In this document: positions 18,398 to 49,136 of the stretch, one piece after another
How positions within the stretch are numbered: position 1 is the first letter of the stretch
Layout: each line of letters begins with the position of its first letter
IMG/VR virus record: IMGVR_UViG_3300044796_000662
Location: 248,001 to 312,000 of that record
Length of the DNA stretch: 64,000 nt
Direction: 5' to 3' (one strand)
Position numbers and translations under genes: made by a program
Notes under the pieces: model-generated
Databases searched by the model: none
What the model was told of the DNA's origin: nothing
What the model saw: only the letters and a program-made list of their open reading frames with translations

Positions 18398-19051
18398 CTA
18401 CTTAAGCCTCGACCCATTCGGTACGGGACTGGTGACCCGCACAAGCTTGAGGCTATCAGGTTCACCGGTTGCGAGGATCATCCCGTGGGAGGTCAACCCC
18501 TTGCCGAAGTCTCGCGGCGCCAGGTTCGCGACCACCACAACTTGCAGCCCAACGAGCATCTCCGGTGGTTGGAACGTCAGCGCGAGCCCGGCCACAATCG
18601 TTCGTGGTGTCGGCTCCCCGAGGTCCACGGTGAGCTTGAGTAGCTTGTCCTTCTTGGGGATGCGATCGGCCGCTGTGATGGTCCCCGCAACCAGCTCCAC
18701 CTTCTGGAAGGTATCGTAGTCGAGGTACGTCGGCTCCGGCTTGGTCTCCGGAACGGCCTTGGGGTCTTCGGCGGGCATGTTCATCCAATCCTCCACGAGC
18801 GTCTTGTGCTTCTCGTACACCTCGTCCGAGATGACAGTGATCCAGGTCCCCTGGTCGAAAGACCACGGAGCGTGACGGACAGTGACCCCGACACCTTGGA
18901 GCTGTTCGATAACCTTCGTGACCTGGCGGAAGGTCCCGATCACCAGGAACCCGGGCCGATCCGTGCAGCGCTCGATGACGAGCTTCACGAGCCGACCCTC
19001 AAGCACCTGCTTCTGCTCCGCTGACGGGGGCACCGGAATGAGCCGCACCAT
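18398..19051 (-). CDS. tRNA-binding OB-fold protein (Trbp111/CsaA/MetRS C-terminal-like) with N-terminal extension
   Basis: DKLLKLTVDLGE, RTIVAGL, VANLAPR, SHGMILA; TGATG coupling to rtcB. Confidence 0.85.
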   Translation of the reverse strand: MVRLIPVPPSAEQKQVLEGRLVKLVIERCTDRPGFLVIGTFRQVTKVIEQLQGVGVTVRHAPWSFDQGTWITVISDEVYEKHKTLVEDWMNMPAEDPKAVPETKPEPTYLDYDTFQKVELVAGTITAADRIPKKDKLLKLTVDLGEPTPRTIVAGLALTFQPPEMLVGLQVVVVANLAPRDFGKGLTSHGMILATGEPDSLKLVRVTSPVPNGSRLK

Positions 19052-20454
19052 CAATCCGTGCCCTTCAAGTTCGCGATCGGGTAGAGGCGGTTCGCCACCC
19101 GTGCGATCTGCTCCTCTTCGAGGACAGCAAGCACGGTGTCGAGGTCCTTGTACACGTGAGCGCACTCGTCGAGCGGCACGTGCTTGTGGTTGCCCACGAT
19201 GCCCTCGATCTGCACACCGTTGAAGGTGCGCACGACATTGGCCATCTCCTCGTCGATGCGGAGCTGCTTGTGCTCCAGCTTCCGCTTCGCCTCCCCGCGA
19301 GCGAGGATGCGCCCCGACCCGTGGTTGACCGAGCAGGCCGTCTTGTACGCGCCCTGGAGCGGGAACAAGATGGCCGCACCCTCGTACATCGAGCCCGGGA
19401 TGAGACACGGGTGCCCCGTGGTCTCCCACTGCGTACCGACGAGATCCGGGTGACCGGCCGGGAAGGCGCGCGTTGCGCCCTTACGGTGGACGAAGCCCCT
19501 CTTCTGCGTGCCGTCCGGCAGGACGATCGTCTCCTCCTGAACCAGGTTGTGGCTGATCTCGTAGTAGACGTTCACGTCCGAGTTGAAGACCTCTTGGGTC
19601 GCCTCCCGGACGCCGTTGACGATGATGTGGCGGTTCGCCACGGCGAAGTTCGCCGCCGAGTTGTGGTAGGCCCAGTATTCCTTGCCGAGCGGCTCGTCAG
19701 CACGCAACCACGAGTCTTCACGGCGGTTCTTCGGCAGACCGCGGAGCTTCGCCCCCTCGTAGAAGAAGTAGTTGGCGAGCTGCCAGCCGTACCCACGGCT
19801 ACCGCAGTGGACCATGATGTAGACCTCGCCCGAGTCGCGGTCGCACTGCATCTCGATGAAGTGATTGCCGCCCCCGACGCTTCCGAGCTGCGGTCCGACC
19901 TTGTCGTAGGCCGCCGAGATCTTCTTCAGCTCCAGGTCGCGCGGAACCGGGATGTACTGGCGCTCACAGAGAGCCTCATCGACCCCGAGAGCCTTCGCGC
20001 CGAAGCGCAGGATCTCCTCGGTCTTGTCGGTCGGGAAGCGCTTCATGAACTTCGGGCGCTCACCACGGATGCCCGTTTGGATGCGCTTCTCGATCTCCGT
20101 GACCCACCGCTCACGGTTGTACTTGCTCTTGACCGAGCCAGCCGTGAGGTTCGCCTTCATGTAGATGACGCCACACGAGATGTCGTAACCGGAGCCGCCC
20201 TGGATGATGGTCCCGTCCGTGACGATGACCGAGCCCACCGGGACACCGTAGCCCGTGTGCGTGTCCGGCATGAGATACGCCCCCGTCACGCCCTCGAAGC
20301 TCGCGCCATGAGAGATCTGTTGCCAGACGTTCTCCTCGGACGCCTCGAAGAGAGACTCGGACAGGAAGGCGTGAGCCTCCACCTTCATCTCGCCTACCTT
20401 CGGCAGGACGTAGTGGTTGTCGGAGACCTTGGTGACGGCGTACTTGAGGGACAT
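19051..20454 (-). CDS. rtcB: RtcB RNA 3'-phosphate/5'-OH ligase
   Basis: MPDTHxG, GYDISCG, GGGNHFIE, HCGSRG, HN, HRKGAT, PGSM, HGSGR. Confidence 0.95.
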   Translation of the reverse strand: MSLKYAVTKVSDNHYVLPKVGEMKVEAHAFLSESLFEASEENVWQQISHGASFEGVTGAYLMPDTHTGYGVPVGSVIVTDGTIIQGGSGYDISCGVIYMKANLTAGSVKSKYNRERWVTEIEKRIQTGIRGERPKFMKRFPTDKTEEILRFGAKALGVDEALCERQYIPVPRDLELKKISAAYDKVGPQLGSVGGGNHFIEMQCDRDSGEVYIMVHCGSRGYGWQLANYFFYEGAKLRGLPKNRREDSWLRADEPLGKEYWAYHNSAANFAVANRHIIVNGVREATQEVFNSDVNVYYEISHNLVQEETIVLPDGTQKRGFVHRKGATRAFPAGHPDLVGTQWETTGHPCLIPGSMYEGAAILFPLQGAYKTACSVNHGSGRILARGEAKRKLEHKQLRIDEEMANVVRTFNGVQIEGIVGNHKHVPLDECAHVYKDLDTVLAVLEEEQIARVANRLYPIANLKGTD

Positions 20455-21469: not shown

Positions 21470-21511
21470 AAGAAACGGGGGCCGCCTTCGCGACCCCCGG
21501 CGAAGTCCCGC

Positions 21512-23176
21512 TTACCAGCTCTTGTTGGAGCGGGTCTGCTTGAGGGACTTCTTGGACGACGCCTTGTCCTGTGACTTGGCGTCGCTCTTGCTCGTTTCGT
21601 GAGCGGGGACAGGTGCGGGAGGCGTAGGCGGTGCAGTGACACCGACCACGGCCGGAATGGCAGGCGAGGCCGTAACGCCCCCGAGGTCACCCGAGAAGGG
21701 TGAGCTGCCGCCAACCCATGCGGGGTTGCCCTGGAGGTTGATGCTGCTGTCAGCGATCCAGGTGACCGGCTGGACAGCCGGTGCCACCACCGCTCCCGTG
21801 AGGGAGGGCTGGACCACGGAGCCAGAGCCCGTGAAGGATGCCGAGGTCGTCGTCTGCGACGATGTGCTCGTCATGACGCCGAGTTCCTGGAGATCGTAGT
21901 CCGCGCCGGCCGAGTAGGACGCGACGCCGACGCCGCGGGTGACCCCGCGTTCGAAGCTCTTGAGGTAGCCATTGTTCTGCACGTAGAGCGACGCGCTGGC
22001 CATCTTGCCGCCGATGTTGGACGAAGCGGCTGCGAGCTTCTCACGTCCCCGGCGCTTGAAGTCGTTCGCCCGGTGCTCCATGACCGCCGCTGCGGCCGCG
22101 TAGTCGCCGCGCTTGGCCTGCGACTCGGCTTCGAGCTGCGAGCGTACGAGCTGCGCGAGACCCACGATGTCATCGAGGGTGGCGTCAAGCTTCTTGTCCT
22201 CGTCGCCCTCCTTGACGAACTGCACGCGGCCCTTGGACTCGACCGTGTGCGTCTCCTTCTTGCCCTGCGCGTCGAAGGTCTGGAAGGTTGCCTTGACGTC
22301 GAAGACGTTGACAGCGCGGGGACCGTGAGCCTTCTGCTTGGCCATCTTGACGGCGACCACAAGATGGCGCGTCTCCTCGGCGAGCAGGTCGGGCACGTTG
22401 ATGTAGACCTCACCCGTGTTCTCTTCGTCCACGTCCACGTCCGAGATGACCTTCTCGACGGAGTGACCGTTGAGCGGCTTCAACTCGATGCGGACGTCAG
22501 TCGCGTACGTCGAGATGAGCCCTCCCAGCTCGGTCCCGAACGCCTGGAGGGCCTTGTCCGGGTCCTCCACGTGTGCGTAGTTACCCTTGCCCTCCTTGGC
22601 GAATTCCGTCAGGAAGTCCGGCGAGAAGTCCGTGCCGCTGCCGTAGCCGAAGGCACTGGCAGTCACGTGCTCGGCGTTGGCCTTGAGCAGCTTGATGATC
22701 TCGGCGGGCTCCTTCGCGGGACCGACGTTCGCCTGACCGTCCGTGAACATGATCACGCGGTGGATGTAGCTGCCGTTGAGATCGAGGTTCTTGAGCAGGT
22801 CGATGCTCTTGAGCATCCCGCCCGAGAAGTTGGTCATCCCGCTCGTGGTGAGCCCCTGGACAGCCTTACGGAACTCGTCCTTGTGGCCTTCGAGGCGTTG
22901 AGGCGCCGCGACCACTCGAACCTGCGAGTCGAAGGTCACGACGCCGAAGACGTCGTCACCCTTCATGTGCTCGATCATCTTGAGCACGCTCTGCTTGGCG
23001 TACTCCAGCTTGGGGCCTGCCATCGACGAGCTGGTGTCGATGCACATGATGAGTGCGAGCTTGGGCCGGGTCTTCTCCGCGTTCACGGCGGGTGCGGTGA
23101 GCGTCAGAACGAGATGGGCGTCCGTCTCCTGATCGAAGCGGACCTTCTCTTGCGTGAGTCGAGTTACGAGCTTCAT
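21512..23176 (-). CDS. vWA (MIDAS) domain protein with low-complexity tail
   Basis: DTSSSM, GMTNF, FTDGQAN; start set at ATG 23176. Confidence 0.85.
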   Translation of the reverse strand: MKLVTRLTQEKVRFDQETDAHLVLTLTAPAVNAEKTRPKLALIMCIDTSSSMAGPKLEYAKQSVLKMIEHMKGDDVFGVVTFDSQVRVVAAPQRLEGHKDEFRKAVQGLTTSGMTNFSGGMLKSIDLLKNLDLNGSYIHRVIMFTDGQANVGPAKEPAEIIKLLKANAEHVTASAFGYGSGTDFSPDFLTEFAKEGKGNYAHVEDPDKALQAFGTELGGLISTYATDVRIELKPLNGHSVEKVISDVDVDEENTGEVYINVPDLLAEETRHLVVAVKMAKQKAHGPRAVNVFDVKATFQTFDAQGKKETHTVESKGRVQFVKEGDEDKKLDATLDDIVGLAQLVRSQLEAESQAKRGDYAAAAAVMEHRANDFKRRGREKLAAASSNIGGKMASASLYVQNNGYLKSFERGVTRGVGVASYSAGADYDLQELGVMTSTSSQTTTSASFTGSGSVVQPSLTGAVVAPAVQPVTWIADSSINLQGNPAWVGGSSPFSGDLGGVTASPAIPAVVGVTAPPTPPAPVPAHETSKSDAKSQDKASSKKSLKQTRSNKSW

Positions 23177-23403
23177 TGGTTGTCTCCGTACACGGTTTCG
23201 GTTCGGTCTCGCCGGATGCGGAGCTGGACGTGCTCCCAAATCACGACTGCCTTAGCGATCGTCCTCAGCTTCCCCAAACCCTTGCGGGCGCGGTCGGCTG
23301 TACAGAGACCGTCCCGGCGTGCCGGGCAAGTCCAAACCCTTTTGGGCGCGACTCGATCTCTTCGCACTTCTTACACCATTGGGCCCTTGTGCGCAAGAGC
23401 CAG

Positions 23404-25492: not shown

Positions 25493-25515
25493 GTTCATCC
25501 TCATCTGGGTTGTAG

Positions 25516-25899
25516 TGGAGCTGGGCGGAATCGAACCGCCGTCTCCAAGAACGTCCTGACCGTCGTTTACGATGCGTAGCCTGATCCTCAGGCGGGATCC
25601 CCTCTGAACCTCGGGGCGGGTTTGCAAGCCATCGCTCTTGCGAGCTGGGAGACGTGCGGCCCTAGACCCTCAGAATGCTCGCTCCCTCATTGGGTCAAAG
25701 GCGGGGAGCCCAGCCTCAAGGGGTTGACGATTCTAGTGATCAGGTTGAGGCGCCCTGATCGAATCGGCTCAGGCCGCGCGGGCCTGGGCGACGCCGTTGT
25801 CGTTGGCAGGTATTTCGCCTCGATTTATTTGAGCGGGTCGAGGAGCCCGCTTACACGTAGACGATCGTTCGGTTCCCGGATCGAAACCAGGGCAGCCCC
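25516..25899 (-). ncRNA. ssrA: tmRNA, tag (A)ANDNGVAQARAA at 25769-25807
   Basis: 5' GGGGCTG / 3' CAGCTCCA acceptor with G3.U70, T arm, internal ANDN...AA* tag. Confidence 0.95.
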
Positions 25900-29264: not shown

Positions 29265-29265
29265 G

Positions 29266-29337
29266 TGGTACGGGAGGAGGGAGTCGAACCCACTCATCCG
29301 GCTTGTAGGGCCAGTGCCTCGCCTTGAGGTCCCCCGC
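29266..29337 (-). tRNA. Atypical tRNA-Val(TAC)
   Basis: Loop CCTACAA (C33), short connector, CCA. Confidence 0.65.
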
Positions 29338-29351
29338 GCATGAAGTGAAGT

Positions 29352-39995: not shown

Positions 39996-40013
39996 ATGGC
40001 TCCCCGAGTTAGT

Positions 40014-40374
40014 GAAGTGAGCGTATAAGCCGAGTTCTGTTCCCCGTTACCGGGTGATGATCATTCCTCTAGGCCCACCGTTGCCGATGGGCTCAAGCAG
40101 TCAACCCGGGGGTATCGGCCGGACGCGCCACCCCCTGCATGACCTTGCTCCCGGTGAGGTTTGCCTTGCGACCGATGTTACCACCGGCCCGGTGGGCTCT
40201 TACTCCACCCTTGCACCCTTACCTGATCCCCTTGCGGGGCCATCGGCGGTCTTCTCTCTGTTGCACTTTCTGTCGGGTCACCCCGCCCGGCCGTTAGCCG
40301 GCACCGTGTCCAGTGGAGCCCGGACTTTCCTCCCGCTGTCGTACTGACCAGCCGGCGACCATCTCACTCACTTC
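40014..40374 (-). ncRNA. rnpB: RNase P RNA (bacterial type A)
   Basis: GAGGAAAGTCCGGGCTC, GAAAGTGCAACAGA, GGCAAACC, ACAGAACTCGGCTTA; P1 GAAGTGAG/CTCACTTC. Confidence 0.95.
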
Positions 40375-42499: not shown

Positions 42500-42573
42500 G
42501 GTGAGCGGCGGGAATCGAACCCAGCGTAGACAGGGCCACAACCTGTTGCCTGAACCACTCGGCTACGCCCACC
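42500..42573 (-). tRNA. tRNA-His(GTG)
   Basis: G-1:C73, loop TTGTGGC. Confidence 0.92.
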
Positions 42574-42851
42574 ATACAGACAGAGAAAGGCGCACGCCGC
42601 CTACCGCGCGAACGTGCAACCCCACATGACCTTAGAGACGGTAGCTCGGTCCGGCGGATTGCCAGACCCATACACCGTCGAAGAGTTGGGGTTGGAGACG
42701 CGCTGGCCTAGCGCGCACTTACCGCTCCGGCGATCTGACCGAAGCCCCTCGGTATTCGTCCCCGGTCCCCCTTGCAAGGACCAGGTCCGCGCATCCCGAC
42801 GTGTAGAGCGGTGGTCAAGGGCCAGAGCACTACACTTTTGTCGGGGATTTG

Positions 42852-42982
42852 TGCCGCTCCCAGGAATCGAACCTGGAACTTGTATGCACGCCGGATGGTC
42901 CCCTCTCACAGGGACGAGATGGCAGGCAGGTTGCTTTTTGTTCGCGTTAAAGGTGCGAGTGGACAACCTTGTCCAGAGCGGC
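42852..42982 (-). ncRNA. tRNA-module chimera F (module in variable loop)
   Basis: Acceptor GCCGCTC/GAGCGGC, T arm, insert ...ATCTC-GTCCC..GGGAC-CATCC...TACAAG. Confidence 0.75.
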
Positions 42983-42990
42983 AGAAACTA

Positions 42991-43091
42991 GACCACATCC
43001 GAGGTGACGGAGCTGGGGGTGACCGACGCCCACTCCGGGGCGTCGGTCTGTCCTTTCCAGGGCTTGTGAGATCCGTCGAGAGGATGCGGTC
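42991..43091 (-). ncRNA. Module-only Y-like RNA H (no tRNA body)
   Basis: GACCGCATCC/GGATGTGGTC stem, TCTC/ACCTC loop, GACGGA/TCCGTC stem, CACAAGC. Confidence 0.7.
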
Positions 43092-43093
43092 GG

Positions 43094-43230
43094 AGCCGGG
43101 TCTCGGAGTCGAACCGAGAATGCTTGTGCGGACTGCGGGGAGCTTCCTTGCGGAAGCGAGGGGCAGACCTGGGTTGAGCTTGCGCTCCTCCGTGGAAGGG
43201 AGGTGACGGACCGACCGTCTGTAACCCGGC
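43094..43230 (-). ncRNA. tRNA-module chimera E (anticodon TCC)
   Basis: Acceptor GCCGGGT/ACCCGGC, D, anticodon and T arms, insert CTC-GCTTCC-GCAA-GGAAGC...CACAAGC. Confidence 0.75.
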
Positions 43231-43247
43231 ATGTGACAGTGAAGTTA

Positions 43248-43379
43248 GGAAGCGTCCGAGGTGTAGTGCGGGGTTTTGGCGCAATAGGCGGGAGTTGAAC
43301 CCGCAACTGTCAGCTTCGAAGGCTGATGCTCAACCATTGAGCATCTCTTGCATGTGCGCGCTACGGGTTGGACGTTTCC
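43248..43379 (-). ncRNA. Module D wrapped around tRNA-Arg(TCG)
   Basis: GGAAACGTCC/GGACGCTTCC, AACCC/ACCTC loop, GTAGCGCG/CGCACTAC, CACAT. Confidence 0.65.
43277..43351 (-). tRNA. tRNA-Arg(TCG) embedded in module D
   Basis: Loop CTTCGAA, GCCA end. Confidence 0.8.
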
Positions 43380-43381
43380 AG

Positions 43382-43490
43382 AGGGGCTTGCCGGAATCGA
43401 ACCGGCGAAGATCTTGTAGGCACTCAAGATGCCTCCTTGCGGAGGCGAGTGCGAGAGCCGTTCAGTTTGGGCGCCATGCCCAAAAGCCCC
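43382..43490 (-). ncRNA. tRNA-module chimera C (no anticodon arm)
   Basis: Acceptor GGGGCTT/AAGCCCC, T arm, CTC-GCCTCC-GCAA-GGAGGC...TACAAG. Confidence 0.72.
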
Positions 43491-43519
43491 AGAGGACAGT
43501 GACAGAAGATAAGTAGCAG

Positions 43520-43644
43520 AGACGGGTGAAGGAGTCGAACCTTCCAAGCTTGTAGACGCACGTGGCGGCTCCCTTGCGGGAGCGAGAGTGAGCGTCGGAT
43601 GTATCTCTTATGAGGAGAAGCGGGACCCACGTCCCTTACCCGTC
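43520..43644 (-). ncRNA. tRNA-module chimera B (anticodon CAT)
   Basis: Acceptor GACGGGT/ACCCGTC, loop CTCATAA, CTC-GCTCCC-GCAA-GGGAGC...TACAAGC. Confidence 0.75.
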
Positions 43645-43652
43645 ATGATTTC

Positions 43653-43791
43653 CCCCGCGTTCGAGTGACTGAGGCTTGTGCGTTGTGATCGTCCTTCAAA
43701 CGATTGCCTTACCATTTGGCTACGGTTCCCGAAGGAATCGACGGGATTCGAACCCGCATTGCTTGTGAGCCTCAACCTGATGAGCGCGAGG
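43653..43791 (-). ncRNA. Circularly permuted YrlA-like RNA G
   Basis: Order: module stem, CACAAGC, T arm, acceptor closed by TTCG, D arm, anticodon arm (GAA), module stem with CTCG. Confidence 0.8.
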
Positions 43792-43794
43792 TAG

Positions 43795-43923
43795 GGGGCA
43801 TTCCAGGAATCGAACCTGGGCTTGTAAGAACCGCGGGGGCTCCCTTTCGGGAGCGAGTTGCGGTGCTGATTCACGTGACCTGTTTTTCAGACAGATTGAG
43901 GAACCAACCTCGGTGAATGCCCC
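43795..43923 (-). ncRNA. tRNA-module chimera A (anticodon GAA)
   Basis: Acceptor GGGCATT/AATGCCC, loop CTGAAAA, CTC-GCTCCC-GAAA-GGGAGC...TACAAGC. Confidence 0.75.
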
Positions 43924-44003: not shown

Positions 44004-44579
44004 TCAGATGCGGATTGTGCCCGCTGGGGACACACTGAAGCCGATCTTCTGCCCGGTTGCGAAGTAGACCTTGATCGCGTGCGCGATGTACGCGCTCGTG
44101 ATGGCAAGGAACGGAAGATGCTCCCCGTTCTCGCAGGTCGCCGCGCTCGTGTTGGACTCGTCGTCGATGACGAAGTCCTCGTCCCAGACGACGCGTCCGA
44201 ACTGCCCGTCCGGCGCCACAGCCCCGTGCAGGCACGGGAGCTTGTTGGCTCGAACGAAGGTCTGGATGACCCGGCGCGAGGCGCCGTTGTCGAGGCAGTC
44301 GAGCACGAGGTCGCTCTTGCCGAGCAGCTCCTTGACGTTGTCGGCGACGAGCTTGTTGCCGTTCGTCTCGATCTTCGTGCCGAAGAGGAAGTTCATCGTC
44401 TGCTTCACGGCCTCGACCTTCGCCTTGCGGAGATGAGTCTTGCCGTGGAACTGGCTCTGCGTGTTCTTCTGCTCGACGTGATCGAAGTCGATGACCTTGA
44501 TGGCCACCTCGACGTTGCGGATGAACTGCACGACGTGGGAGCCGAGCGCTCCGACGCCGACGATGGTGATGTTCTTCAT
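44004..44579 (-). CDS. ThiF/E1-like adenylating enzyme
   Basis: GVGALGS, IDFDHVEQKN, K..K, DCLDN..SR, candidate catalytic Cys ATCE. Confidence 0.9.
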   Translation of the reverse strand: MKNITIVGVGALGSHVVQFIRNVEVAIKVIDFDHVEQKNTQSQFHGKTHLRKAKVEAVKQTMNFLFGTKIETNGNKLVADNVKELLGKSDLVLDCLDNGASRRVIQTFVRANKLPCLHGAVAPDGQFGRVVWDEDFVIDDESNTSAATCENGEHLPFLAITSAYIAHAIKVYFATGQKIGFSVSPAGTIRI

Positions 44580-44636
44580 CTGGATGCCTCCGTGTACCGT
44601 GGCCATGATACGTACCATGACCACGGTACTTGGTGG

Positions 44637-44909
44637 TCAGCTACCGAACGGCGTCTTCGGCCTGATCTGGATCAGGTTGAACGGACGCTGCTCGTTCGGA
44701 CGGAAGCGGTCCACCACGAAGTCGGTGAAGTCCACGTCCGCGTCAGCGCGGATGCCGGGCACGCTGCCGTTGGTGACAGCCTCCGTGATCCACTGCTTGA
44801 TGTCACCCTCGGTCGCGTCGAACGGCGCCGGGTTCGGGAGGTCGCCGTTCTGGCCCCTCCAGGTGATGTTGACACGTGCCTCGTGAGCGAGGATGTCGTT
44901 CTGGTTCAT
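44637..44909 (-). CDS. Ubiquitin-like (beta-grasp) protein, C-terminus PKTPFG-S
   Basis: 90 aa, SD AGGAGG, beta-grasp-like pattern, near-terminal Gly, between JAB and E1. Confidence 0.7.
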   Translation of the reverse strand: MNQNDILAHEARVNITWRGQNGDLPNPAPFDATEGDIKQWITEAVTNGSVPGIRADADVDFTDFVVDRFRPNEQRPFNLIQIRPKTPFGS

Positions 44910-45319
44910 GACGTTGCCTCCTTCTGATCTGATCGCGCGGTTTGAATCATGAGCGAGTGGGCGCGCAGCTCCACAAGCCATCCAGGCTCGTCCTGAACGA
45001 CGAAGCGTTGGTAGTCGTACTTTCCAGGCCCCGACCAGCGGGCCACGATGATGCGGTCGGAGCTGGTGATCCACCACTCCAAGCGCCGGTCGAGTGCCTG
45101 CTCCACTGCGTGGAAGGTTGTCACATCCGTCCACGACGGCCTGGGCATGCCCGAGCCGGGGTGGCTGTGTGCGAACCCGAGCAGGTTGTCTCGGTTGTCC
45201 CAGAGGACGTCCCACAGCTTGCGGCTGTCAGGAAGAGAACCGCCCGTGCGGTCTTCCGGAAGGTGCCAGTAGATGGGCTCCCCCTTAAGGTTGACCACCA
45301 CTCCTGCTTCGATCGTCAT
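44906..45319 (-). CDS. JAB/MPN+ metallopeptidase
   Basis: N-terminal E, HSHP...PSWTD (JAMM motif). Confidence 0.88.
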   Translation of the reverse strand: MTIEAGVVVNLKGEPIYWHLPEDRTGGSLPDSRKLWDVLWDNRDNLLGFAHSHPGSGMPRPSWTDVTTFHAVEQALDRRLEWWITSSDRIIVARWSGPGKYDYQRFVVQDEPGWLVELRAHSLMIQTARSDQKEATS

Positions 45320-45489
45320 GGGCGTCCCCGCTTCTGTTCGAGCCAGGCTTGGGCAGCGTCGCCGACGAGCGCGTTCTTCTGAGCCCACTGCTTCAGGCTC
45401 AGACCACTGCCCTCTTCCTTCCAACGTCGGATGAGGCGTTGACGCTCGCGGCGACCCAGACCCTTGCTCTTCTCTTCGTCAGTCCTCAT
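45316..45489 (-). CDS. 57-aa hypothetical protein (not in ORF track)
   Basis: MRTDEEKSKG...LKQWAQKN...GRP*; ATGA-coupled to JAB. Confidence 0.55.
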   Translation of the reverse strand: MRTDEEKSKGLGRRERQRLIRRWKEEGSGLSLKQWAQKNALVGDAAQAWLEQKRGRP

Positions 45490-46426
45490 CGACGTGCCGG
45501 AAGACGACGAGGCGTCTTTCCTTATCTGCTTGGTGGATTACACCGGGCAGAGACTCCAACGTGAAGTAGTTGTCTCCGCGCTCTCCGGTGCCGTGATCGA
45601 TCAGACAGATCCCAGCGTCGATGATCCTGAGGGTCTGAGCGTCACATACGCACTCGAAACGGCGCCGCAGCATGCGGTAGACCACCACCATCTCGTTGCG
45701 CTTACCTGCACGCCTGTGGTCAAGGTACTCGGCACCGCCAACGGCCAGAGCCGCACGCGCTGCCTCTCCGAAGTCTTCCTTGGCCATGTCGCGACGGCCC
45801 TGTGCGTTGCCGAGCTGCTCGAAGAGCTTCAGGCGACGTTCTTCACGTGCCAGGCGCTCCTCTTCCTCTCGACGCTGCCGCTCAAGCTCCTCACGCCGGC
45901 GCTGAGCCTCGATGCGCTGGTAGGCTTCCATGCGGAAAGCCGCGTCCAGAGCAGGCGCAACGCCCGCGATCATGTTCACCGACTCCTTCTGGTCGAAGAA
46001 CGACTTGAGCACCTCCTCTTCGGGGCCGAGCGGCATCTCCTGCCGCGCGTACACGAGAGGGCCGCCCTCATGCGTCCGTCCCGCGCTGACGCGAGCGAAC
46101 CTGTCGAGTCCCGGTTCGACGAGGAAGACAGGCTCCGAAGAGGCTGCGATCTTCGCCGGATTGGGATCGACTCGAACATCGTCTGCGATGAAGCGGTCTC
46201 CGACGAGGTACCCGCTCTTGAGATGGCGGAGCGACTCGACGGCGGCTTCGGCTTCCTTGCCGAAGGTCGCCTCACGGCTCTTCAGGTGGAAGGTGTACCA
46301 CCCGTGCTCGGGCGGCCTCTTCCCCTTGACCCGCCACGTACGCTCCCCGGCTCGGAGTTCGTTGTCTCCGACCCACGGCGCGACGAGGGTCTCGTCCGCC
46401 GCTTGAAGCAGATCCCTCCAGCCCAT
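45479..46426 (-). CDS. Putative divergent E2-like protein
   Basis: Coiled-coil linker, then DAGICL...FTLESLPGVI resembling the UBC GxICL...TL..VL core; operon context. Confidence 0.5.
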   Translation of the reverse strand: MGWRDLLQAADETLVAPWVGDNELRAGERTWRVKGKRPPEHGWYTFHLKSREATFGKEAEAAVESLRHLKSGYLVGDRFIADDVRVDPNPAKIAASSEPVFLVEPGLDRFARVSAGRTHEGGPLVYARQEMPLGPEEEVLKSFFDQKESVNMIAGVAPALDAAFRMEAYQRIEAQRRREELERQRREEEERLAREERRLKLFEQLGNAQGRRDMAKEDFGEAARAALAVGGAEYLDHRRAGKRNEMVVVYRMLRRRFECVCDAQTLRIIDAGICLIDHGTGERGDNYFTLESLPGVIHQADKERRLVVFRHVDED

Positions 46427-46503
46427 GGTCATCCTCATGTGGCAGGACAGAGGCGCACCGCCTTGCGAGCGATGCGCCCCGTCTCTGCTAGTAAGGAAGC
46501 GGC

Positions 46504-48399
46504 TCAGGCAGCCCAGGCGGGCTTGACGAGCAGCTTCGTGTTGACGATCTCGTCCACGAGCGAGACGCGCTGCGGAGCAACGGCCACGTTCGTGATGCCA
46601 ACCGGCGTCGCTGCGATGAGGTTGCGGATCGCACGCGGAATCGCGTACGGGTCCACGCGCCCATCCTGCGCGAGGTTGGCGAAGATCCGGTCGTCGATCG
46701 GCAGGCACGGGATGCCGAGCTGCGCCGCCGTATCACGGACAGCGCGGTCGCCTTCCCCACCGCCGACCTTCAGAAGACCGAACGCGATCGGGTTGATGCC
46801 CGAGTTGCGAACGTGCGGCATGAAGGCAGGAGCCTGCTCGTCGCCGACGAAGATCATGATGGCATCTTCACCCGGCCCCGGCTTGCGATCCTGGAGAGCA
46901 CGGACACCCTCACCGTACGAGGTACCACCGTTCGCGGCGATGCCGCGGAAGGCGTTCTCGATGCCGGCAGCCGATGCGTGCTTGATCTCGATGCGGCGCC
47001 CCGCCGTGTTGAAGACGGACACGTGCAGCTTGTCCAGCGGGAATGCCTGGAGGAACTGCGCGATGTACTTCTTCGCGGTCGGGATGCTGTTCACCATCGA
47101 GCCCGAGATGTCCAGGATGAAGTAGATGACGAGGCCCTTCATGACCTCGACGACCGCCTTCTGGAGCGCCTTGTCCGCGCCCTCCTGGAGCTTCTCCTTC
47201 ACTTCCTTGGACTTGACGCGCGTCGCGATGTTCGCCGCACGCATGTCCTCGGAAGCCGCATTCGCCTTCTCCCACCGCTCACGGACGTCCTGGACCTGCA
47301 TGAGGCCCAGCTCCTCGATGGTGGGAGTCAGGATGACGAGGTCCTTGTTCGAGAGCGAACCGGCCTCGATTGCGGCCGTCAGGATGGCCCGCGTCACACC
47401 GTTCGGCAGCATACCGACGATGCGCTTGTAGTTCGGGCGGTCCTTGACGATCCTCTCGCAGATCTGCTCCTCGGAGAGACCGACCCACGTTTCGGCTGCC
47501 TCGACGGCCTGGCCGATGGCCAGGGTCCTGCGACCATCCTTCGCCTGCGCCTGCTTCCAGCGCAACGTTTCGAAGAACTTCGTCGTGGTCGGCTTGTACC
47601 CGACGCGACGCGCGAGGTCCATGACGGTCTGACGGAAGCCAGCCTTCACGAGCCCTTCGAGCAGCTTCGGGTTCTCCTCACGGAAGAGGAGCCACTTCTC
47701 GACCGCCTTCTCCCAGCGACCGAGGAACGGCCTACGAGCCGACTTGCCGAACCCAAGCTCGCGGTTGATGGCCGCGACGCCAGGGAGCATGAGCACGTCG
47801 TACACGCGGAGCAGGAGCTTCGGGTTGAAGTCCTTGCCGTCCTTCGTGTGGAGCAGCATCATCGCCTCGCCGATGTCCCTGTAGTCCTCGTCGTGGAAGG
47901 CGACCTTCTTGCCGCCGTTCTCGGTATCGAGGACCGGGTCACCCTTGCGCGTCTGGACGAGCATGAGGGCGGCCAGGATCACCTTGAGGTCGCGGTGCTC
48001 CTGCTTGAACGCGTAGCTCGCCCAGTGGGCAGCGAACTCGTTGTCCTTCGCGTAGACGTCCGCAGCCTGCCGGTACATCCAGGTCGCGACCTCCGGGAAG
48101 ATGCCGGCCGAGCGGTACTCGCCGATGATGTTCCCGTTGTCCGCCTTGATCTGGTAGCCGTTGTCGGCCAGCGTGCCGACCTTGACCTTCGTGGTCTTCC
48201 GGCCGACCTTGTTGACCTGGTAGACGACCTTCTTCTTGTCGTCACCCTCGACCTTGTGGGTCACGGGGGTCCAGCGGACCCCGATCCTTGCGGACGGGTC
48301 GCGCACGACCATGCCAGGACGGTTGTGGACCATGTGGTCCGTGTAGCCGATGAGGGTCTGGATGATCCCCTCGGCAGCGCTCAGGTTTTCCTTGTCCAT
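46504..48399 (-). CDS. Ro60/TROVE-like helical domain plus C-terminal vWA protein
   Basis: 631 aa; helical N-part (KDNEFAAHWASYA), MIDAS DISGS...GGTS...GDEQ; start set at ATG 48399 because upstream is tRNA. Confidence 0.7.
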   Translation of the reverse strand: MDKENLSAAEGIIQTLIGYTDHMVHNRPGMVVRDPSARIGVRWTPVTHKVEGDDKKKVVYQVNKVGRKTTKVKVGTLADNGYQIKADNGNIIGEYRSAGIFPEVATWMYRQAADVYAKDNEFAAHWASYAFKQEHRDLKVILAALMLVQTRKGDPVLDTENGGKKVAFHDEDYRDIGEAMMLLHTKDGKDFNPKLLLRVYDVLMLPGVAAINRELGFGKSARRPFLGRWEKAVEKWLLFREENPKLLEGLVKAGFRQTVMDLARRVGYKPTTTKFFETLRWKQAQAKDGRRTLAIGQAVEAAETWVGLSEEQICERIVKDRPNYKRIVGMLPNGVTRAILTAAIEAGSLSNKDLVILTPTIEELGLMQVQDVRERWEKANAASEDMRAANIATRVKSKEVKEKLQEGADKALQKAVVEVMKGLVIYFILDISGSMVNSIPTAKKYIAQFLQAFPLDKLHVSVFNTAGRRIEIKHASAAGIENAFRGIAANGGTSYGEGVRALQDRKPGPGEDAIMIFVGDEQAPAFMPHVRNSGINPIAFGLLKVGGGEGDRAVRDTAAQLGIPCLPIDDRIFANLAQDGRVDPYAIPRAIRNLIAATPVGITNVAVAPQRVSLVDEIVNTKLLVKPAWAA

Positions 48400-48960: not shown

Positions 48961-49136
48961 TGTCGCGCCCGAGTGGAAGGAGCCGGATGCCTTTCGGCTG
49001 GATTCCATTTCCAGTGCGTCTACCATTTCGCCACTCGCCCAGGTTGTAGAGCCTTGCGGCTCAGTGGGCGAGGCAGGATTCGAACCTGCATATCCCTTGC
49101 GGGATGCTTGTGGGATCCCTCGATGAGGGCGCGACA
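48961..49136 (-). ncRNA. Circularly permuted YrlA-like RNA I
   Basis: TGTCGCGCCC/GGGCGCGACA, TCATC/CACTC loop, CACAAGC, T arm, closed acceptor, Leu-type D arm, anticodon arm. Confidence 0.8.

What the first reader, a model, noticed from the sequence alone, without database searches (positions are those of the whole stretch)
42852..43923. One conserved RNA module grafted onto tRNA in four topologies
Seen: module = outer helix, asymmetric loop whose 3' strand is (A/C)CUC-G, inner helix, then (C/U)ACAAG, usually just 5' of a T arm. (i) Inserted in the variable loop of linear tRNA bodies, mostly capped by a GNRA tetraloop: A (GAA), B (CAT), E (TCC), F, and C (no anticodon arm). (ii) As the terminal stem of circularly permuted tRNAs with a closed acceptor: G 43653-43791 and I 48961-49136. 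(iii) Wrapped around an intact tRNA-Arg(TCG): D, which has ACAUG in place of ACAAG. (iv) With no tRNA: H. Helix sequences differ while pairing and the loop motifs are kept, which suggests selection on structure. It does not match the canonical Ro-binding GGUCCGA/UUGACC bulged helix, and unlike YrlA the anticodon arm is usually retained.
Basis: seen in the sequence. Interest (0 to 1): 0.9.

Follow-up and report, generated by a model that had tools for sequence, protein, structure and literature searches.

The report
Phage tRNA mimics sharing one handle
A huge uncultured phage, and dozens of its relatives, encode a previously undescribed family of tRNA-like RNAs that all carry the same conserved two-helix "handle", attached to the tRNA shape in several different ways. 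They most resemble bacterial Y RNAs and probably dock onto a protein encoded next to them.

Summary
All nine copies exist on the minus strand. The module is helix X, an internal loop with invariant CUC(G) opposite A-N-C-A, a second helix, then YACA(A/C)GC.

It occurs in four arrangements:
- as the variable arm of five linear tRNA-like RNAs (A, B, C, E, F);
- as the terminal stem of two circularly permuted, closed-acceptor tRNA mimics (G, I);
- wrapped round a real tRNA-Arg (D);
- on a plain hairpin (H).

A covariance model finds 119 linear copies in 48 of 64 related jumbo-phage loci. I also found 36 permuted and 30 wrapped copies. Covariation is strong: 91-93% of cells pair, against 60-65% when shuffled.

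No Rfam family reaches threshold. Copy G scores 23.9 bits against YrlA, whose cut-off is 69. The canonical Ro-binding motifs are absent.

The RNAs lie beside a conserved gene cassette: a helical-plus-vWA protein, a 409-aa unknown, JAB, a small ORF and a ThiF-like E1. The same phage encodes RtcB. The vWA protein has the domain order of Ro60 and weak whole-length fold matches to it, but no TROVE signal by sequence or in its N-terminal part alone.

Best reading: a Y-RNA-like set of tRNA mimics with a protein-docking handle. The partner and the function are inferred. Main rival: a processing or splicing signal. It is a new variant of a known kind.

The parts
43796..43922 (-). Copy A. Linear tRNA-like RNA with acceptor, D arm and anticodon loop CUGAAAA (GAA). 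The module forms the variable arm, capped by GAAA, followed by the T arm.
   Evidence: Fold (z -3.9). CM R1 hit 43803-43868 at 71.7 bits. Rfam gives only tRNA-Sec at 32.6 bits, below its cut-off of 47.
43652..43792 (-). Copy G. Circularly permuted tRNA mimic. A terminal stem made by the 5' and 3' ends leads through a loop (CAUCA / ACUC) to helix X, then CACAAGC, T arm, acceptor closed by UUCG, D arm and an anticodon-like arm.
   Evidence: Fold. It is a member of the 36-sequence permuted alignment A5 with covariation. Weak Rfam YrlA hit, 23.9 bits against a cut-off of 69.
43520..43645 (-). Copy B. Linear tRNA-like RNA with anticodon loop CUCAUAA (CAU). The module forms the variable arm, capped by GCAA.
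   Evidence: Fold. CM R1 73.2 bits. With the module deleted, ARAGORN calls tRNA-Met(cat).
43383..43490 (-). Copy C. Linear tRNA-like RNA with no anticodon arm: acceptor, D-like hairpin, module capped by GCAA, T arm.
   Evidence: Fold (z -4.1). CM R1 61.8 bits.
43251..43376 (-). Copy D. The module is wrapped round an intact tRNA-Arg(UCG) at 43277-43351. Order: outer helix 5' strand, loop, helix X strand, ACAU|G (G is tRNA +1), tRNA with encoded CCA, helix X strand, ACCUCG, outer helix 3' strand.
   Evidence: tRNA found (59.4 bits). Flanking helices read. The same arrangement occurs 30 times in 60 sources.
43095..43230 (-). Copy E. Linear tRNA-like RNA with anticodon loop CUUCCAC (UCC) and an extra AGC-GCAA-GCU mini-hairpin. 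The module forms the variable arm, capped by GCAA.
   Evidence: Fold (z -4.7). CM R1 77.1 bits. Counterparts with the same UCC loop occur in L003, L007 and L009 and in L005, L012 and L041.
42992..43090 (-). Copy H. The module with no tRNA: terminal stem, loop (UCUC / ACCUC), helix X, CUCACAAGC, then a long plain hairpin.
   Evidence: Fold (z -3.2).
42853..42982 (-). Copy F. Linear tRNA-like RNA with an atypical anticodon region. The module forms the variable arm, capped by a 6-nt loop.
   Evidence: Fold. CM R1 62.4 bits.
48961..49136 (-). Copy I. A second permuted tRNA mimic. It has a 10-bp terminal stem, loop UCAUC / ACUC and helix X. An extra hairpin lies between CACAAGC and the T arm. An 8-bp acceptor is closed by an inserted hairpin, followed by a D arm and an anticodon-like arm.
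   Evidence: Fold (z -4.7, none of the shuffles as stable). Sequence.
46504..48399 (-). Candidate protein partner, 631 aa: a small beta domain, a helical-repeat region and a C-terminal vWA domain with an intact MIDAS motif (DxSxS...T...D invariant).
   Evidence: Pfam VWA_2 only, no TROVE. The full-length AF2 model has Ro60/TROVE entries as its top PDB hits at E 2e-7 to 1e-5, but with TM 0.2-0.35. The BFVD top seven are all full-length matches; only two of them carry a family name (TROVE, DUF2828), both with low TM-scores. The N-terminal 420 aa alone gives no significant match. At least 1780 homologues exist, many on contigs of hundreds of kb.
44004..46708 (-). Conserved cassette between the vWA gene and the RNA cluster: a 409-aa unknown (45479-46708, start uncertain), a JAB-domain protein (44906-45424), a 90-aa ORF (44637-44909) and a ThiF/E1-like protein (44004-44624).
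   Evidence: Pfam. PADLOC E1-E2 similarity for the ThiF-like protein. Synteny with the RNAs in other contigs.
19051..20454 (-). RtcB RNA ligase, encoded at the edge of the same tRNA array.
   Evidence: Pfam RtcB, E 1.3e-86.

Best explanation
These are phage-encoded tRNA-mimic non-coding RNAs of the Y-RNA/YrlA kind, built from two parts.

The first part is a conserved handle: helix X, an internal loop with invariant CUC opposite A-N-C-A, a second helix, and a YACA(A/C)GC linker. I propose it is the docking site for a phage protein. The most likely partner is the neighbouring helical-repeat plus vWA protein, which has the domain order of Ro60.

The second part is a tRNA-shaped body that is presented to tRNA-recognising factors. 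These could be tRNA-cleaving defence nucleases, repair enzymes such as the phage's own RtcB, or processing and modification enzymes.

Because the handle is autonomous, it can sit where a class II variable arm would be (linear copies). It can also form the 5'/3' terminal stem (permuted copies and H) or clamp the leader and trailer of a real tRNA (D).

Shown: the structure, its conservation, the topologies and the gene neighbourhood. Inferred: protein binding, the identity of the partner, and a role in tRNA surveillance or repair or as a decoy.
For: - Structure. Linear copies: 90.6% of cells pair against 60.4% when shuffled and at most 49% when slid, and 18 of 19 pairs show compensatory change. 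Permuted copies: 93.0% against 65.2% shuffled and at most 41% slid, and 25 of 30 pairs are compensatory. In 37 of the 38 candidates folded, including the 36 kept as genuine permuted copies, the unconstrained fold gives the terminal stem.
- Invariant unpaired bases sit in the loop and linker, as expected of a recognition site: CUC in 105-106 of 106, and A, C, A, G of ACA(A/C)G in 109 of 109.
- Resemblance to YrlA. Permuted copies have a terminal stem made by the two ends, an internal loop, and a tRNA-like domain with T arm, closed acceptor and D arm. G gives a weak YrlA hit of 23.9 bits, and the YrlA-like RNA beside the Ro gene of phage Bxz1 scores only 32.5 bits with the same model. YrlA features are taken from PMC4201824 and bioRxiv 10.1101/312249.
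- The tRNA bodies are eroded. With the module deleted, ARAGORN accepts only about half of them, and some have odd loops. U33 is not conserved in the permuted copies (A5). Yet the anticodon triplet is kept among counterparts: UCC in seven phages and CAU in several.
- Neighbourhood. 48 of 64 loci chosen for the vWA gene carry at least one linear copy within about 10 kb. In several MAG contigs the RNAs lie next to the cassette, with no ordinary tRNA in the 4-8 kb held. In L165, L174 and L209 they abut the vWA gene itself, though L209 also holds one ordinary tRNA.
- RtcB is encoded in the same array, as in the bacterial rsr-yrlA-rtcBA operon (PMC7790460).
- The full-length fold search puts Ro60/TROVE first.
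Against: - There is no direct evidence of expression or of protein binding.
- The protein is not a TROVE protein by sequence. Pfam finds no TROVE in 42 family members or in 10 remote relatives. hhalign against Bxz1 Ro matches only the MIDAS segment. The N-terminal region alone has no Ro60 fold match. The TM-scores of the full-length matches are low.
- The conserved RNA motif differs from the Ro-binding motifs. GGUCCGA and GNCGAA are absent, and the conserved strand here is the 3' one. The model R1 finds nothing near Bxz1 Ro.
- The loci were mostly chosen through the vWA gene, so the co-occurrence is partly built in. The RNAs are even closer to the ThiF-like gene, so another cassette protein could be the partner.
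- The wrapped form D contains an apparently ordinary tRNA with encoded CCA, which fits a processing role at least as well.
Confidence: 0.42

Rival explanations
1. The module is a processing or splicing signal. An endonuclease cuts both strands of the conserved internal loop and RtcB rejoins the ends. Linear copies would lose the capped hairpin as a variable-arm intron. Permuted copies and D would become circular intermediates that RNase P and 3' trimming then open. This would be a bacterial-phage analogue of archaeal and algal intron-containing and permuted tRNA genes.
For: - One motif in intron-like, permuted and leader/trailer positions is exactly the pattern known for the bulge-helix-bulge (BHB) motif (PMC3978253, PMC4090602).
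- The phage encodes RtcB and its own RNase P RNA.
- D holds a canonical tRNA whose +1 G is the G of ACA(A/U/C)G, and many wrapped tRNAs encode CCA.
- M. smegmatis YrlA is cut by RNase P and receives CCA (bioRxiv 10.1101/312249).
Against: - The motif is not a BHB. The two loop strands face each other rather than being 3-nt bulges offset by 4 bp.
- No splicing endonuclease was seen in the proteins I scanned.
- After removal of the module many bodies are still not acceptable tRNAs. C has no anticodon arm, the permuted copies lack U33 and a discriminator, and G's acceptor is closed by only UUCG.
- The anticodons of A, B and E duplicate ordinary tRNAs already in the array.
- H has no tRNA at all.
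Confidence: 0.2
2. The linear copies are working tRNAs with an oversized class II-type variable arm. They are charged and used in translation. The arm serves as an identity element or as a shield or marker that distinguishes phage tRNAs from host tRNAs, for example against anticodon nucleases.
For: - 105 of 106 linear copies have a 7-nt acceptor pairing.
- The T loop is invariant (GGUUCGANUCC) and D loops often keep GG.
- Anticodon loops of A, B and E are canonical, with U33 and a purine at position 37.
- Anticodons are conserved among counterparts in different phages.
Against:
- C lacks an anticodon arm.
- Several D arms are plain hairpins.
- Ten or so extra conserved bases lie between the arm and the T stem, where tRNAs have one or two.
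- This reading does not explain the permuted, wrapped and tRNA-free forms.
Confidence: 0.15
3. The module is a generic RNase III-type processing stem or terminator of the tRNA array, that is two helices with an internal loop as in phage T7 early-RNA sites, with no dedicated partner.
For: - The two-helix-plus-internal-loop shape resembles T7 RNase III sites (my own knowledge).
- 34 of 77 permuted copies (a redundant set) have a run of at least four T within 15 nt after the terminal stem.
- D looks like a leader-trailer processing stem.
Against: - Invariant single-stranded bases (CUC, ACAAGC) conserved across phages whose vWA proteins are only 42-69% identical to the window's are not expected of an RNase III site.
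- Placing such a site inside the variable arm of a tRNA-like body would destroy it.
- The consensus scan found no terminator on the minus strand within the cluster.
Confidence: 0.08

Closest known systems
YrlA (Rfam RF02553), the bacterial and phage Y RNA-like tRNA mimics that bind Ro60/Rsr
   Same: The permuted copies G and I and 36 relatives share its outline. The 5' and 3' ends pair into a terminal stem with a conserved internal loop. The rest folds as a tRNA-like domain with T arm, closed acceptor and D arm. The genes lie near a helical-plus-vWA protein gene, and RtcB is encoded in the same genome, as with rsr-yrlA-rtcBA.
   Different: - The stem leaves the tRNA core at the variable-arm position, not the anticodon-stem position, and an anticodon-like arm is kept.
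- The GNCGAA motif is absent, and CUC/ANCA plus ACAAGC are conserved instead.
- The score is far below the Rfam cut-off.
- The neighbouring protein has no recognisable TROVE domain.
- The same stem also occurs closed, inside linear tRNA-like RNAs, and round a real tRNA. Neither arrangement is described for YrlA.
Metazoan and Deinococcus Y RNAs with Ro60
   Same: A modular design: a protein-binding terminal stem plus an effector-binding domain. H has the simple stem-loop-stem shape of a Y RNA.
   Different: The GGUCCGA/UUGACC bulged helix is absent. No Ro60 orthologue was shown here.
Class II tRNAs (Ser, Leu, Tyr, Sec) with long variable arms
   Same: In A, B, C, E and F the module emerges between the anticodon arm and the T arm, where the long variable arm sits. 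Rfam tRNA-Sec gives the best, though sub-threshold, hit to A.
   Different: The arm is about 45 nt, with two helices and an invariant internal loop, followed by a conserved linker of about 10 nt. The bodies are often non-canonical.
Intron-containing, split and circularly permuted tRNA genes of archaea and red algae (bulge-helix-bulge motif, splicing endonuclease and RtcB)
   Same: One structural motif is found at several topological positions of tRNA genes, including permuted genes, and an RtcB ligase is encoded nearby.
   Different: The motif is not a bulge-helix-bulge. No splicing endonuclease was found. Many bodies would not be functional tRNAs after removal of the module. The setting is a phage of bacteria, which encodes a tmRNA and a bacterial-type RNase P RNA.

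Membership tests
YrlA (RF02553) | Reaches the Rfam gathering score (69 bits) | tested here: not met
   G scores 23.9 bits and no other copy is reported. As a yardstick, the YrlA-like RNA next to the Ro gene of phage Bxz1 also reaches only 32.5 bits, so the model is insensitive for phage versions.
YrlA (RF02553) | Terminal stem formed by the 5' and 3' ends, plus a tRNA-like domain with T arm, closed acceptor and D arm | tested here: met
   Met for G, I and 36 relatives. Not applicable to the linear copies A, B, C, E and F, whose acceptor is open and whose stem is capped.
YrlA (RF02553) | The protein-binding stem continues from the position of the anticodon stem | tested here: not met
   Here the stem leaves at the variable-arm position and a separate anticodon-like arm is present. 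YrlA geometry is taken from bioRxiv 10.1101/312249.
YrlA (RF02553) | Conserved 5'-strand motif GNCGAA(N)G | tested here: not met
   The 5' strands read for example CUCGCGCUCAUCA and CCCGUAUCCAACA. The conserved bases are A-N-C-A and, on the 3' strand, CUCG. Both Bxz1 RNAs do carry GCCGA(G/A).
YrlA (RF02553) | Encoded next to a TROVE-domain Ro60/Rsr gene | tested here: inconclusive
   A helical-plus-vWA gene is adjacent, but Pfam finds no TROVE domain in it. The fold evidence is weak. The rest of the 363-kb genome could not be scanned for a canonical Ro.
Ro60/TROVE protein family (for the 631-aa protein) | TROVE (HEAT-repeat ring) domain detectable | tested here: not met
   No Pfam TROVE hit at E up to 10, none in 42 members and none in 10 remote relatives. 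hhalign against Bxz1 Ro matches only the MIDAS segment, probability 7%. The N-terminal model alone has a best PDB E-value of 0.08, to unrelated helical repeats.
Ro60/TROVE protein family (for the 631-aa protein) | C-terminal vWA domain with MIDAS, following a helical-repeat region of about 400 aa | tested here: met
   VWA_2 at residues 426-520. D430, S432, S434, T493 and D520 are invariant. Helical region at residues 100-420. Full-length Foldseek top hits are Ro60/TROVE entries over 511-580 columns, though with TM only 0.2-0.35.
tRNA (RF00005) | Reaches the Rfam gathering score, or is called by ARAGORN | tested here: not met
   None of A, B, C, E, F, G, H or I is called. Only the tRNA-Arg core of D is, at 59.4 bits. 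With the module removed in silico, ARAGORN accepts about half of 105 linear copies.
Bulge-helix-bulge introns and permuted tRNA genes | Two 3-nt bulges on opposite strands separated by a 4-bp helix | tested here: not met
   The loop strands (4-5 nt and 4-7 nt) face each other between an 8-bp helix and a 6-10-bp helix.
Metazoan Y RNA | GGUCCGA / UUGACC bulged helix | tested here: not met
   It is absent from all nine copies as read. No Y_RNA hit appears in the permissive Rfam scan.

The most novel reading that the evidence does not exclude
The module is the recognition element of a phage-encoded tRNA rearrangement or repair pathway that has no BHB motif. In that reading linear, permuted and leader/trailer-clamped precursors are all cut in the conserved loop and resealed by the phage RtcB. 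Alternatively, chargeable tRNAs are physically tethered to a vWA protein through their variable arm. Either would be a new way for a virus to make or police its own tRNA pool.
Probability: 0.2. Interest if true: 0.9.

Novelty: new variant of a known kind. Interest (0 to 1): 0.74.

Why it matters
Huge phages carry near-complete tRNA sets. Here these come with a tmRNA, an RNase P RNA and RtcB, and such sets are thought to keep translation going while host defences cut tRNAs.

This family adds several conserved, structured, tRNA-shaped RNAs per genome that standard annotation misses. They are unannotated even in GenBank record KX853510.

It shows that a Y-RNA-like handle can be moved between topological positions of the tRNA fold. 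If the partner is a very divergent Ro60-like protein, the Ro/Y RNA system would extend to many uncultured jumbo phages, with a different recognition code. If the module is instead a processing signal, it would be a bacterial-virus counterpart of archaeal permuted and intron-containing tRNA genes.

Either way it gives a defined, testable RNA-protein pair and a covariance model for annotating these genomes.

Tried and rejected
- blastn of the 1.7-kb cluster against 50,697 phage genomes found no match.
- tblastn of the vWA protein found only Virus Rctr197k.
- Sequence searches of the vWA protein, as single sequence and as profile, against PDB gave only vWA hits. PHROGs, NCBIfam and PADLOC gave nothing.
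- The Pfam scans, the N-terminal fold search and hhalign against Bxz1 Ro did not establish TROVE homology. I therefore do not call the protein Ro60.
- The plain MAFFT/RNAalifold consensus missed helix X because of misalignment. I replaced it with a structure-guided covariance model.
- A mutual-information scan of the unpaired conserved columns gave no candidate tertiary pair; the maximum was 0.26 bits.
- The candidate copy at 29277-29336 scores only 18 bits. It is a small tRNA-like element with encoded CCA, not a module copy.
The loci that passed all came from MAG contigs; the vWA or ThiF-like genes were found in six of the twelve I checked.
- The 409-aa neighbour has no PDB or Pfam match.
- I considered known small ribozymes and group I introns and rejected them. 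The permissive Rfam scan found none, and the module is too small for a group I intron.
Full report
**Source and setting.** The window is part of IMG/VR contig IMGVR_UViG_3300044796_000662, 363 kb long (L002 is 100% identical). It is a jumbo phage. One neighbouring gene matches a PHROG family shared with Agrobacterium phage Atu_ph07 and Salicola phage SCTP-2. On the minus strand lie 51 ARAGORN tRNAs, a tmRNA (25513-25899) and a bacterial class A RNase P RNA (40010-40374, 299.5 bits). RtcB is at 19051-20454.

**The observation.** I read the minus strand and folded each element without constraints.

- Five are linear tRNA-like RNAs in which the module sits between the anticodon arm and the T arm: A, B, C, E and F.
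- Two are circularly permuted mimics whose 5' and 3' ends form the second helix of the module and whose acceptor is closed by a loop: G and I.
- One has the module round an intact tRNA-Arg(UCG): D. The G of its ACAUG is tRNA position +1.
- One has the module on a plain hairpin: H.

In the linear orientation the module reads: C, helix X 5' strand (about 8 bp), N-N-CUC, a 6-bp hairpin whose first pair is G:C and whose cap is usually GNRA, A-N-C-N-N, helix X 3' strand, (U/C)ACA(A/C)GC, 2-6 nt, T arm.

**More than chance, and conserved.** A covariance model (R1) was built from 21 linear copies of six related contigs. It scores the five window copies at 62-77 bits. There is a clear gap to the permuted copies (20-35 bits, partial matches) and to ordinary tRNAs (below 25 bits).

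I fetched 67 IMG/VR loci through the neighbouring vWA protein. In those loci R1 finds 119 copies at E <= 1e-7 in 48 of 64 sources, one to six per locus.

On that alignment 90.6% of cells form standard pairs. The figures are 60.4% after shuffling the partners and at most 49% after sliding them. Eighteen of 19 pairs show changes on both sides. The alignment is fitted to the model, so it leans towards the structure. However, the independent single-sequence folds show the same helices.

The unpaired invariant bases are C before helix X, CUC, A after the hairpin, and ACA(A/C)GC.

**The other topologies recur.** A pattern-plus-pairing search found 38 permuted candidates, of which 36 have the consistent architecture. 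In 37 of those 38 the unconstrained minimum-energy fold forms a 9-11-bp terminal stem.

On a plain MAFFT alignment of 36 of them (A5), I counted pairs on a structure taken from G's fold. It gives 93.0% paired, against 65.2% shuffled and at most 41% slid. Twenty-five of 30 pairs are compensatory, including nine of ten in the terminal stem. The terminal-stem register was itself a selection criterion (at least 8 of 9 pairs). The informative controls are therefore the shuffle and the diversity of pair types.

The wrapped form occurs 30 times in 60 sources. It always has ACA(A/C/U) immediately before tRNA +1, and often an encoded CCA before helix X.

The only GenBank relative, Virus Rctr197k (KX853510), has a permuted and a wrapped copy in stretches annotated only with tRNAs.

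An exact-pattern scan of IMG/VR found 81 stretches in 71 contigs. Of these, 37 were already in the vWA list, and at least four more carry a vWA-gene match in the DNA held; one of them, L089, is only a weak partial hit at 29% identity. In genome contigs, only MAG contigs passed the model among the 80 loci I could list and test, and the cassette genes were found in six of the twelve I checked.

**What it is not.**
- No Rfam family reaches its threshold on any module RNA, in the window or in six other loci.
- The best hits are tRNA-Sec on A (32.6 bits, cut-off 47) and YrlA on G (23.9 bits, cut-off 69).
- The GGUCCGA/UUGACC helix and the bacterial GNCGAA motif (PMC4201824, PMC12135203) are absent.
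- As a control I took the canonical Ro locus of mycobacteriophage Bxz1 (gp220). Its upstream RNA gets 32.5 bits with the YrlA model. It and its neighbour carry GCCGA(G/A). R1 finds nothing there.
- The loop is not a bulge-helix-bulge.

**The tRNA bodies.** Of 106 linear copies, 105 have a 7-nt acceptor pairing. With the module deleted in silico, ARAGORN accepts about half, with assorted and sometimes odd anticodon loops. Copy C has no anticodon arm, and several D arms are plain hairpins. In the permuted copies position 33 of the anticodon-like loop is not conserved as U.

Even so, counterparts in different phages keep the same triplet, for example UCC in E-type and CAU in B-type copies. A, B and E duplicate anticodons already served by ordinary tRNAs in the array. 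This pattern fits mimicry of particular tRNAs better than decoding.

**Neighbourhood and candidate partner.** A conserved cassette lies between I and the main cluster:
- a 631-aa protein (46504-48399);
- a 409-aa unknown;
- a JAB protein;
- a 90-aa ORF;
- a ThiF/E1-like protein.

In several MAG contigs the RNAs lie next to the cassette, with no ordinary tRNA in the 4-8 kb held. In L165, L174 and L209 they abut the vWA gene itself, though L209 also holds one ordinary tRNA. The linkage is therefore not merely shared residence in a tRNA array.

The 631-aa protein belongs to a family of at least 1780 sequences, many of them on contigs of hundreds of kb. It has a C-terminal vWA domain with an invariant MIDAS motif.

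- The full-length AlphaFold model (pLDDT 80.7, pTM 0.49) has Ro60/TROVE structures as its five best PDB matches. These include the Thermus phage phiLo Ro60. E-values are 2e-7 to 1e-5 over 511-580 columns, but TM-scores are only 0.18-0.35.
- In BFVD the best matches are again full-length proteins of about 500-550 aa. The only named ones are a TROVE protein and a DUF2828 protein.
- Against this, Pfam sees no TROVE in any member or remote relative.
- hhalign against Bxz1 Ro aligns only the MIDAS segment.
- The N-terminal 420 residues modelled alone (pLDDT 82.9, pTM 0.70) have no significant match.

I therefore treat "Ro60-like" as an architectural resemblance, not as membership.

**Mechanism.** The most economical reading is a Y-RNA-like ribonucleoprotein. 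The module is a protein-docking handle, and the tRNA-shaped part is what is presented to tRNA-recognising factors. Three things favour it:
- the close parallel of the permuted copies with YrlA, including a tRNA-free member (H) like simple Y RNAs;
- the invariant single-stranded bases;
- the conserved gene neighbourhood, together with RtcB in the same phage, as in the bacterial rsr-yrlA-rtcBA operon (PMC7790460; jumbo-phage TROVE/RtcB context in PMC7824862).

Binding, the partner and the biological role (tRNA repair platform, decoy for anticodon nucleases, or tether to a nuclease as in RYPER) are all inferred.

**Main rival.** The module could mark sites of cleavage and RtcB ligation, which would turn all the topologies into ordinary or circular tRNA precursors. 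The wrapped form, the phage RNase P RNA and RtcB speak for it. The non-BHB geometry, the defective bodies, the redundant anticodons and H speak against it.

**Lesser rivals.** These are working class II-like tRNAs, and generic RNase III or terminator stems.

**Novelty.** I found no description of this family in Rfam 15 or in the searchable literature. A large catalogue of candidate viral RNAs (PMC10690425) could not be checked by sequence. I rate it a new variant of a known kind: tRNA-mimicking Y-like RNAs. The new features are a different recognition motif, attachment at the variable-arm position, and the same handle used in closed, terminal and tRNA-clamping forms.

Noticed in passing
window 40010-40374 (-): The phage encodes a full-length bacterial class A RNase P RNA (299.5 bits, model positions 1-367) inside its tRNA array, directly next to tRNA-Trp.
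   Followed up: no
window 25513-25899 (-): A phage-encoded tmRNA with tag peptide ANDNGVAQARAA. A tmRNA is also present in related locus L039 at 19469-19831.
   Followed up: no
window 19051-20454 (-): An RtcB RNA ligase gene (Pfam E 1.3e-86) lies at the edge of the tRNA array. It is relevant to both the repair reading and the splicing reading.
   Followed up: partly
window 44004-46708 (-): A conserved cassette of a ThiF/E1-like protein (similar to the E1 part of CBASS Cap2-type E1-E2 proteins), a 90-aa ORF ending ...TPFGS, a JAB peptidase and a 409-aa protein with no detectable family. It is syntenic with the vWA gene and the RNAs in many contigs. Its function is unknown; it might be a ubiquitin-like conjugation or sulfur-transfer system.
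   Followed up: partly
window 42573-42852 (-): The 280-nt gene-free stretch between copy F and tRNA-His folds much better than shuffles (-133 kcal/mol, z -4.3). It matches no Rfam family and may be another structured RNA.
   Followed up: partly
L027 15913-16005 (+): A bacterial small SRP (4.5S) RNA, 57.7 bits against a cut-off of 40, is encoded in a related phage immediately after a permuted module copy.
   Followed up: no
window 29265-29351 (-): A small tRNA-like element lies between tRNA-Gln and tRNA-Leu. It has a T arm, a roughly 6-bp acceptor and an encoded ACCA end, but no normal D arm. Neither ARAGORN nor Rfam calls it, and it scores 18 bits with R1.
   Followed up: partly
loci L033, L036, L044, L048, L049, L052, L055: Several of the tRNAs clamped by the module are called with A34 anticodons (AAA, ATT, ATC, ATG, AAT), which are unusual for bacterial decoding.
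   Followed up: no
window 21512-23239 (-): A second, unrelated vWA-domain protein (575 aa, vWA at the N-terminus) is encoded within the tRNA array. Homologues occur in L083 and L137.
   Followed up: no
L001 (KX853510) 21480-21680 and 21825-21945: The deposited genome of Virus Rctr197k contains a permuted and a wrapped copy of the module. In the record, the stretch holding them is annotated with tRNA genes only.
   Followed up: yes
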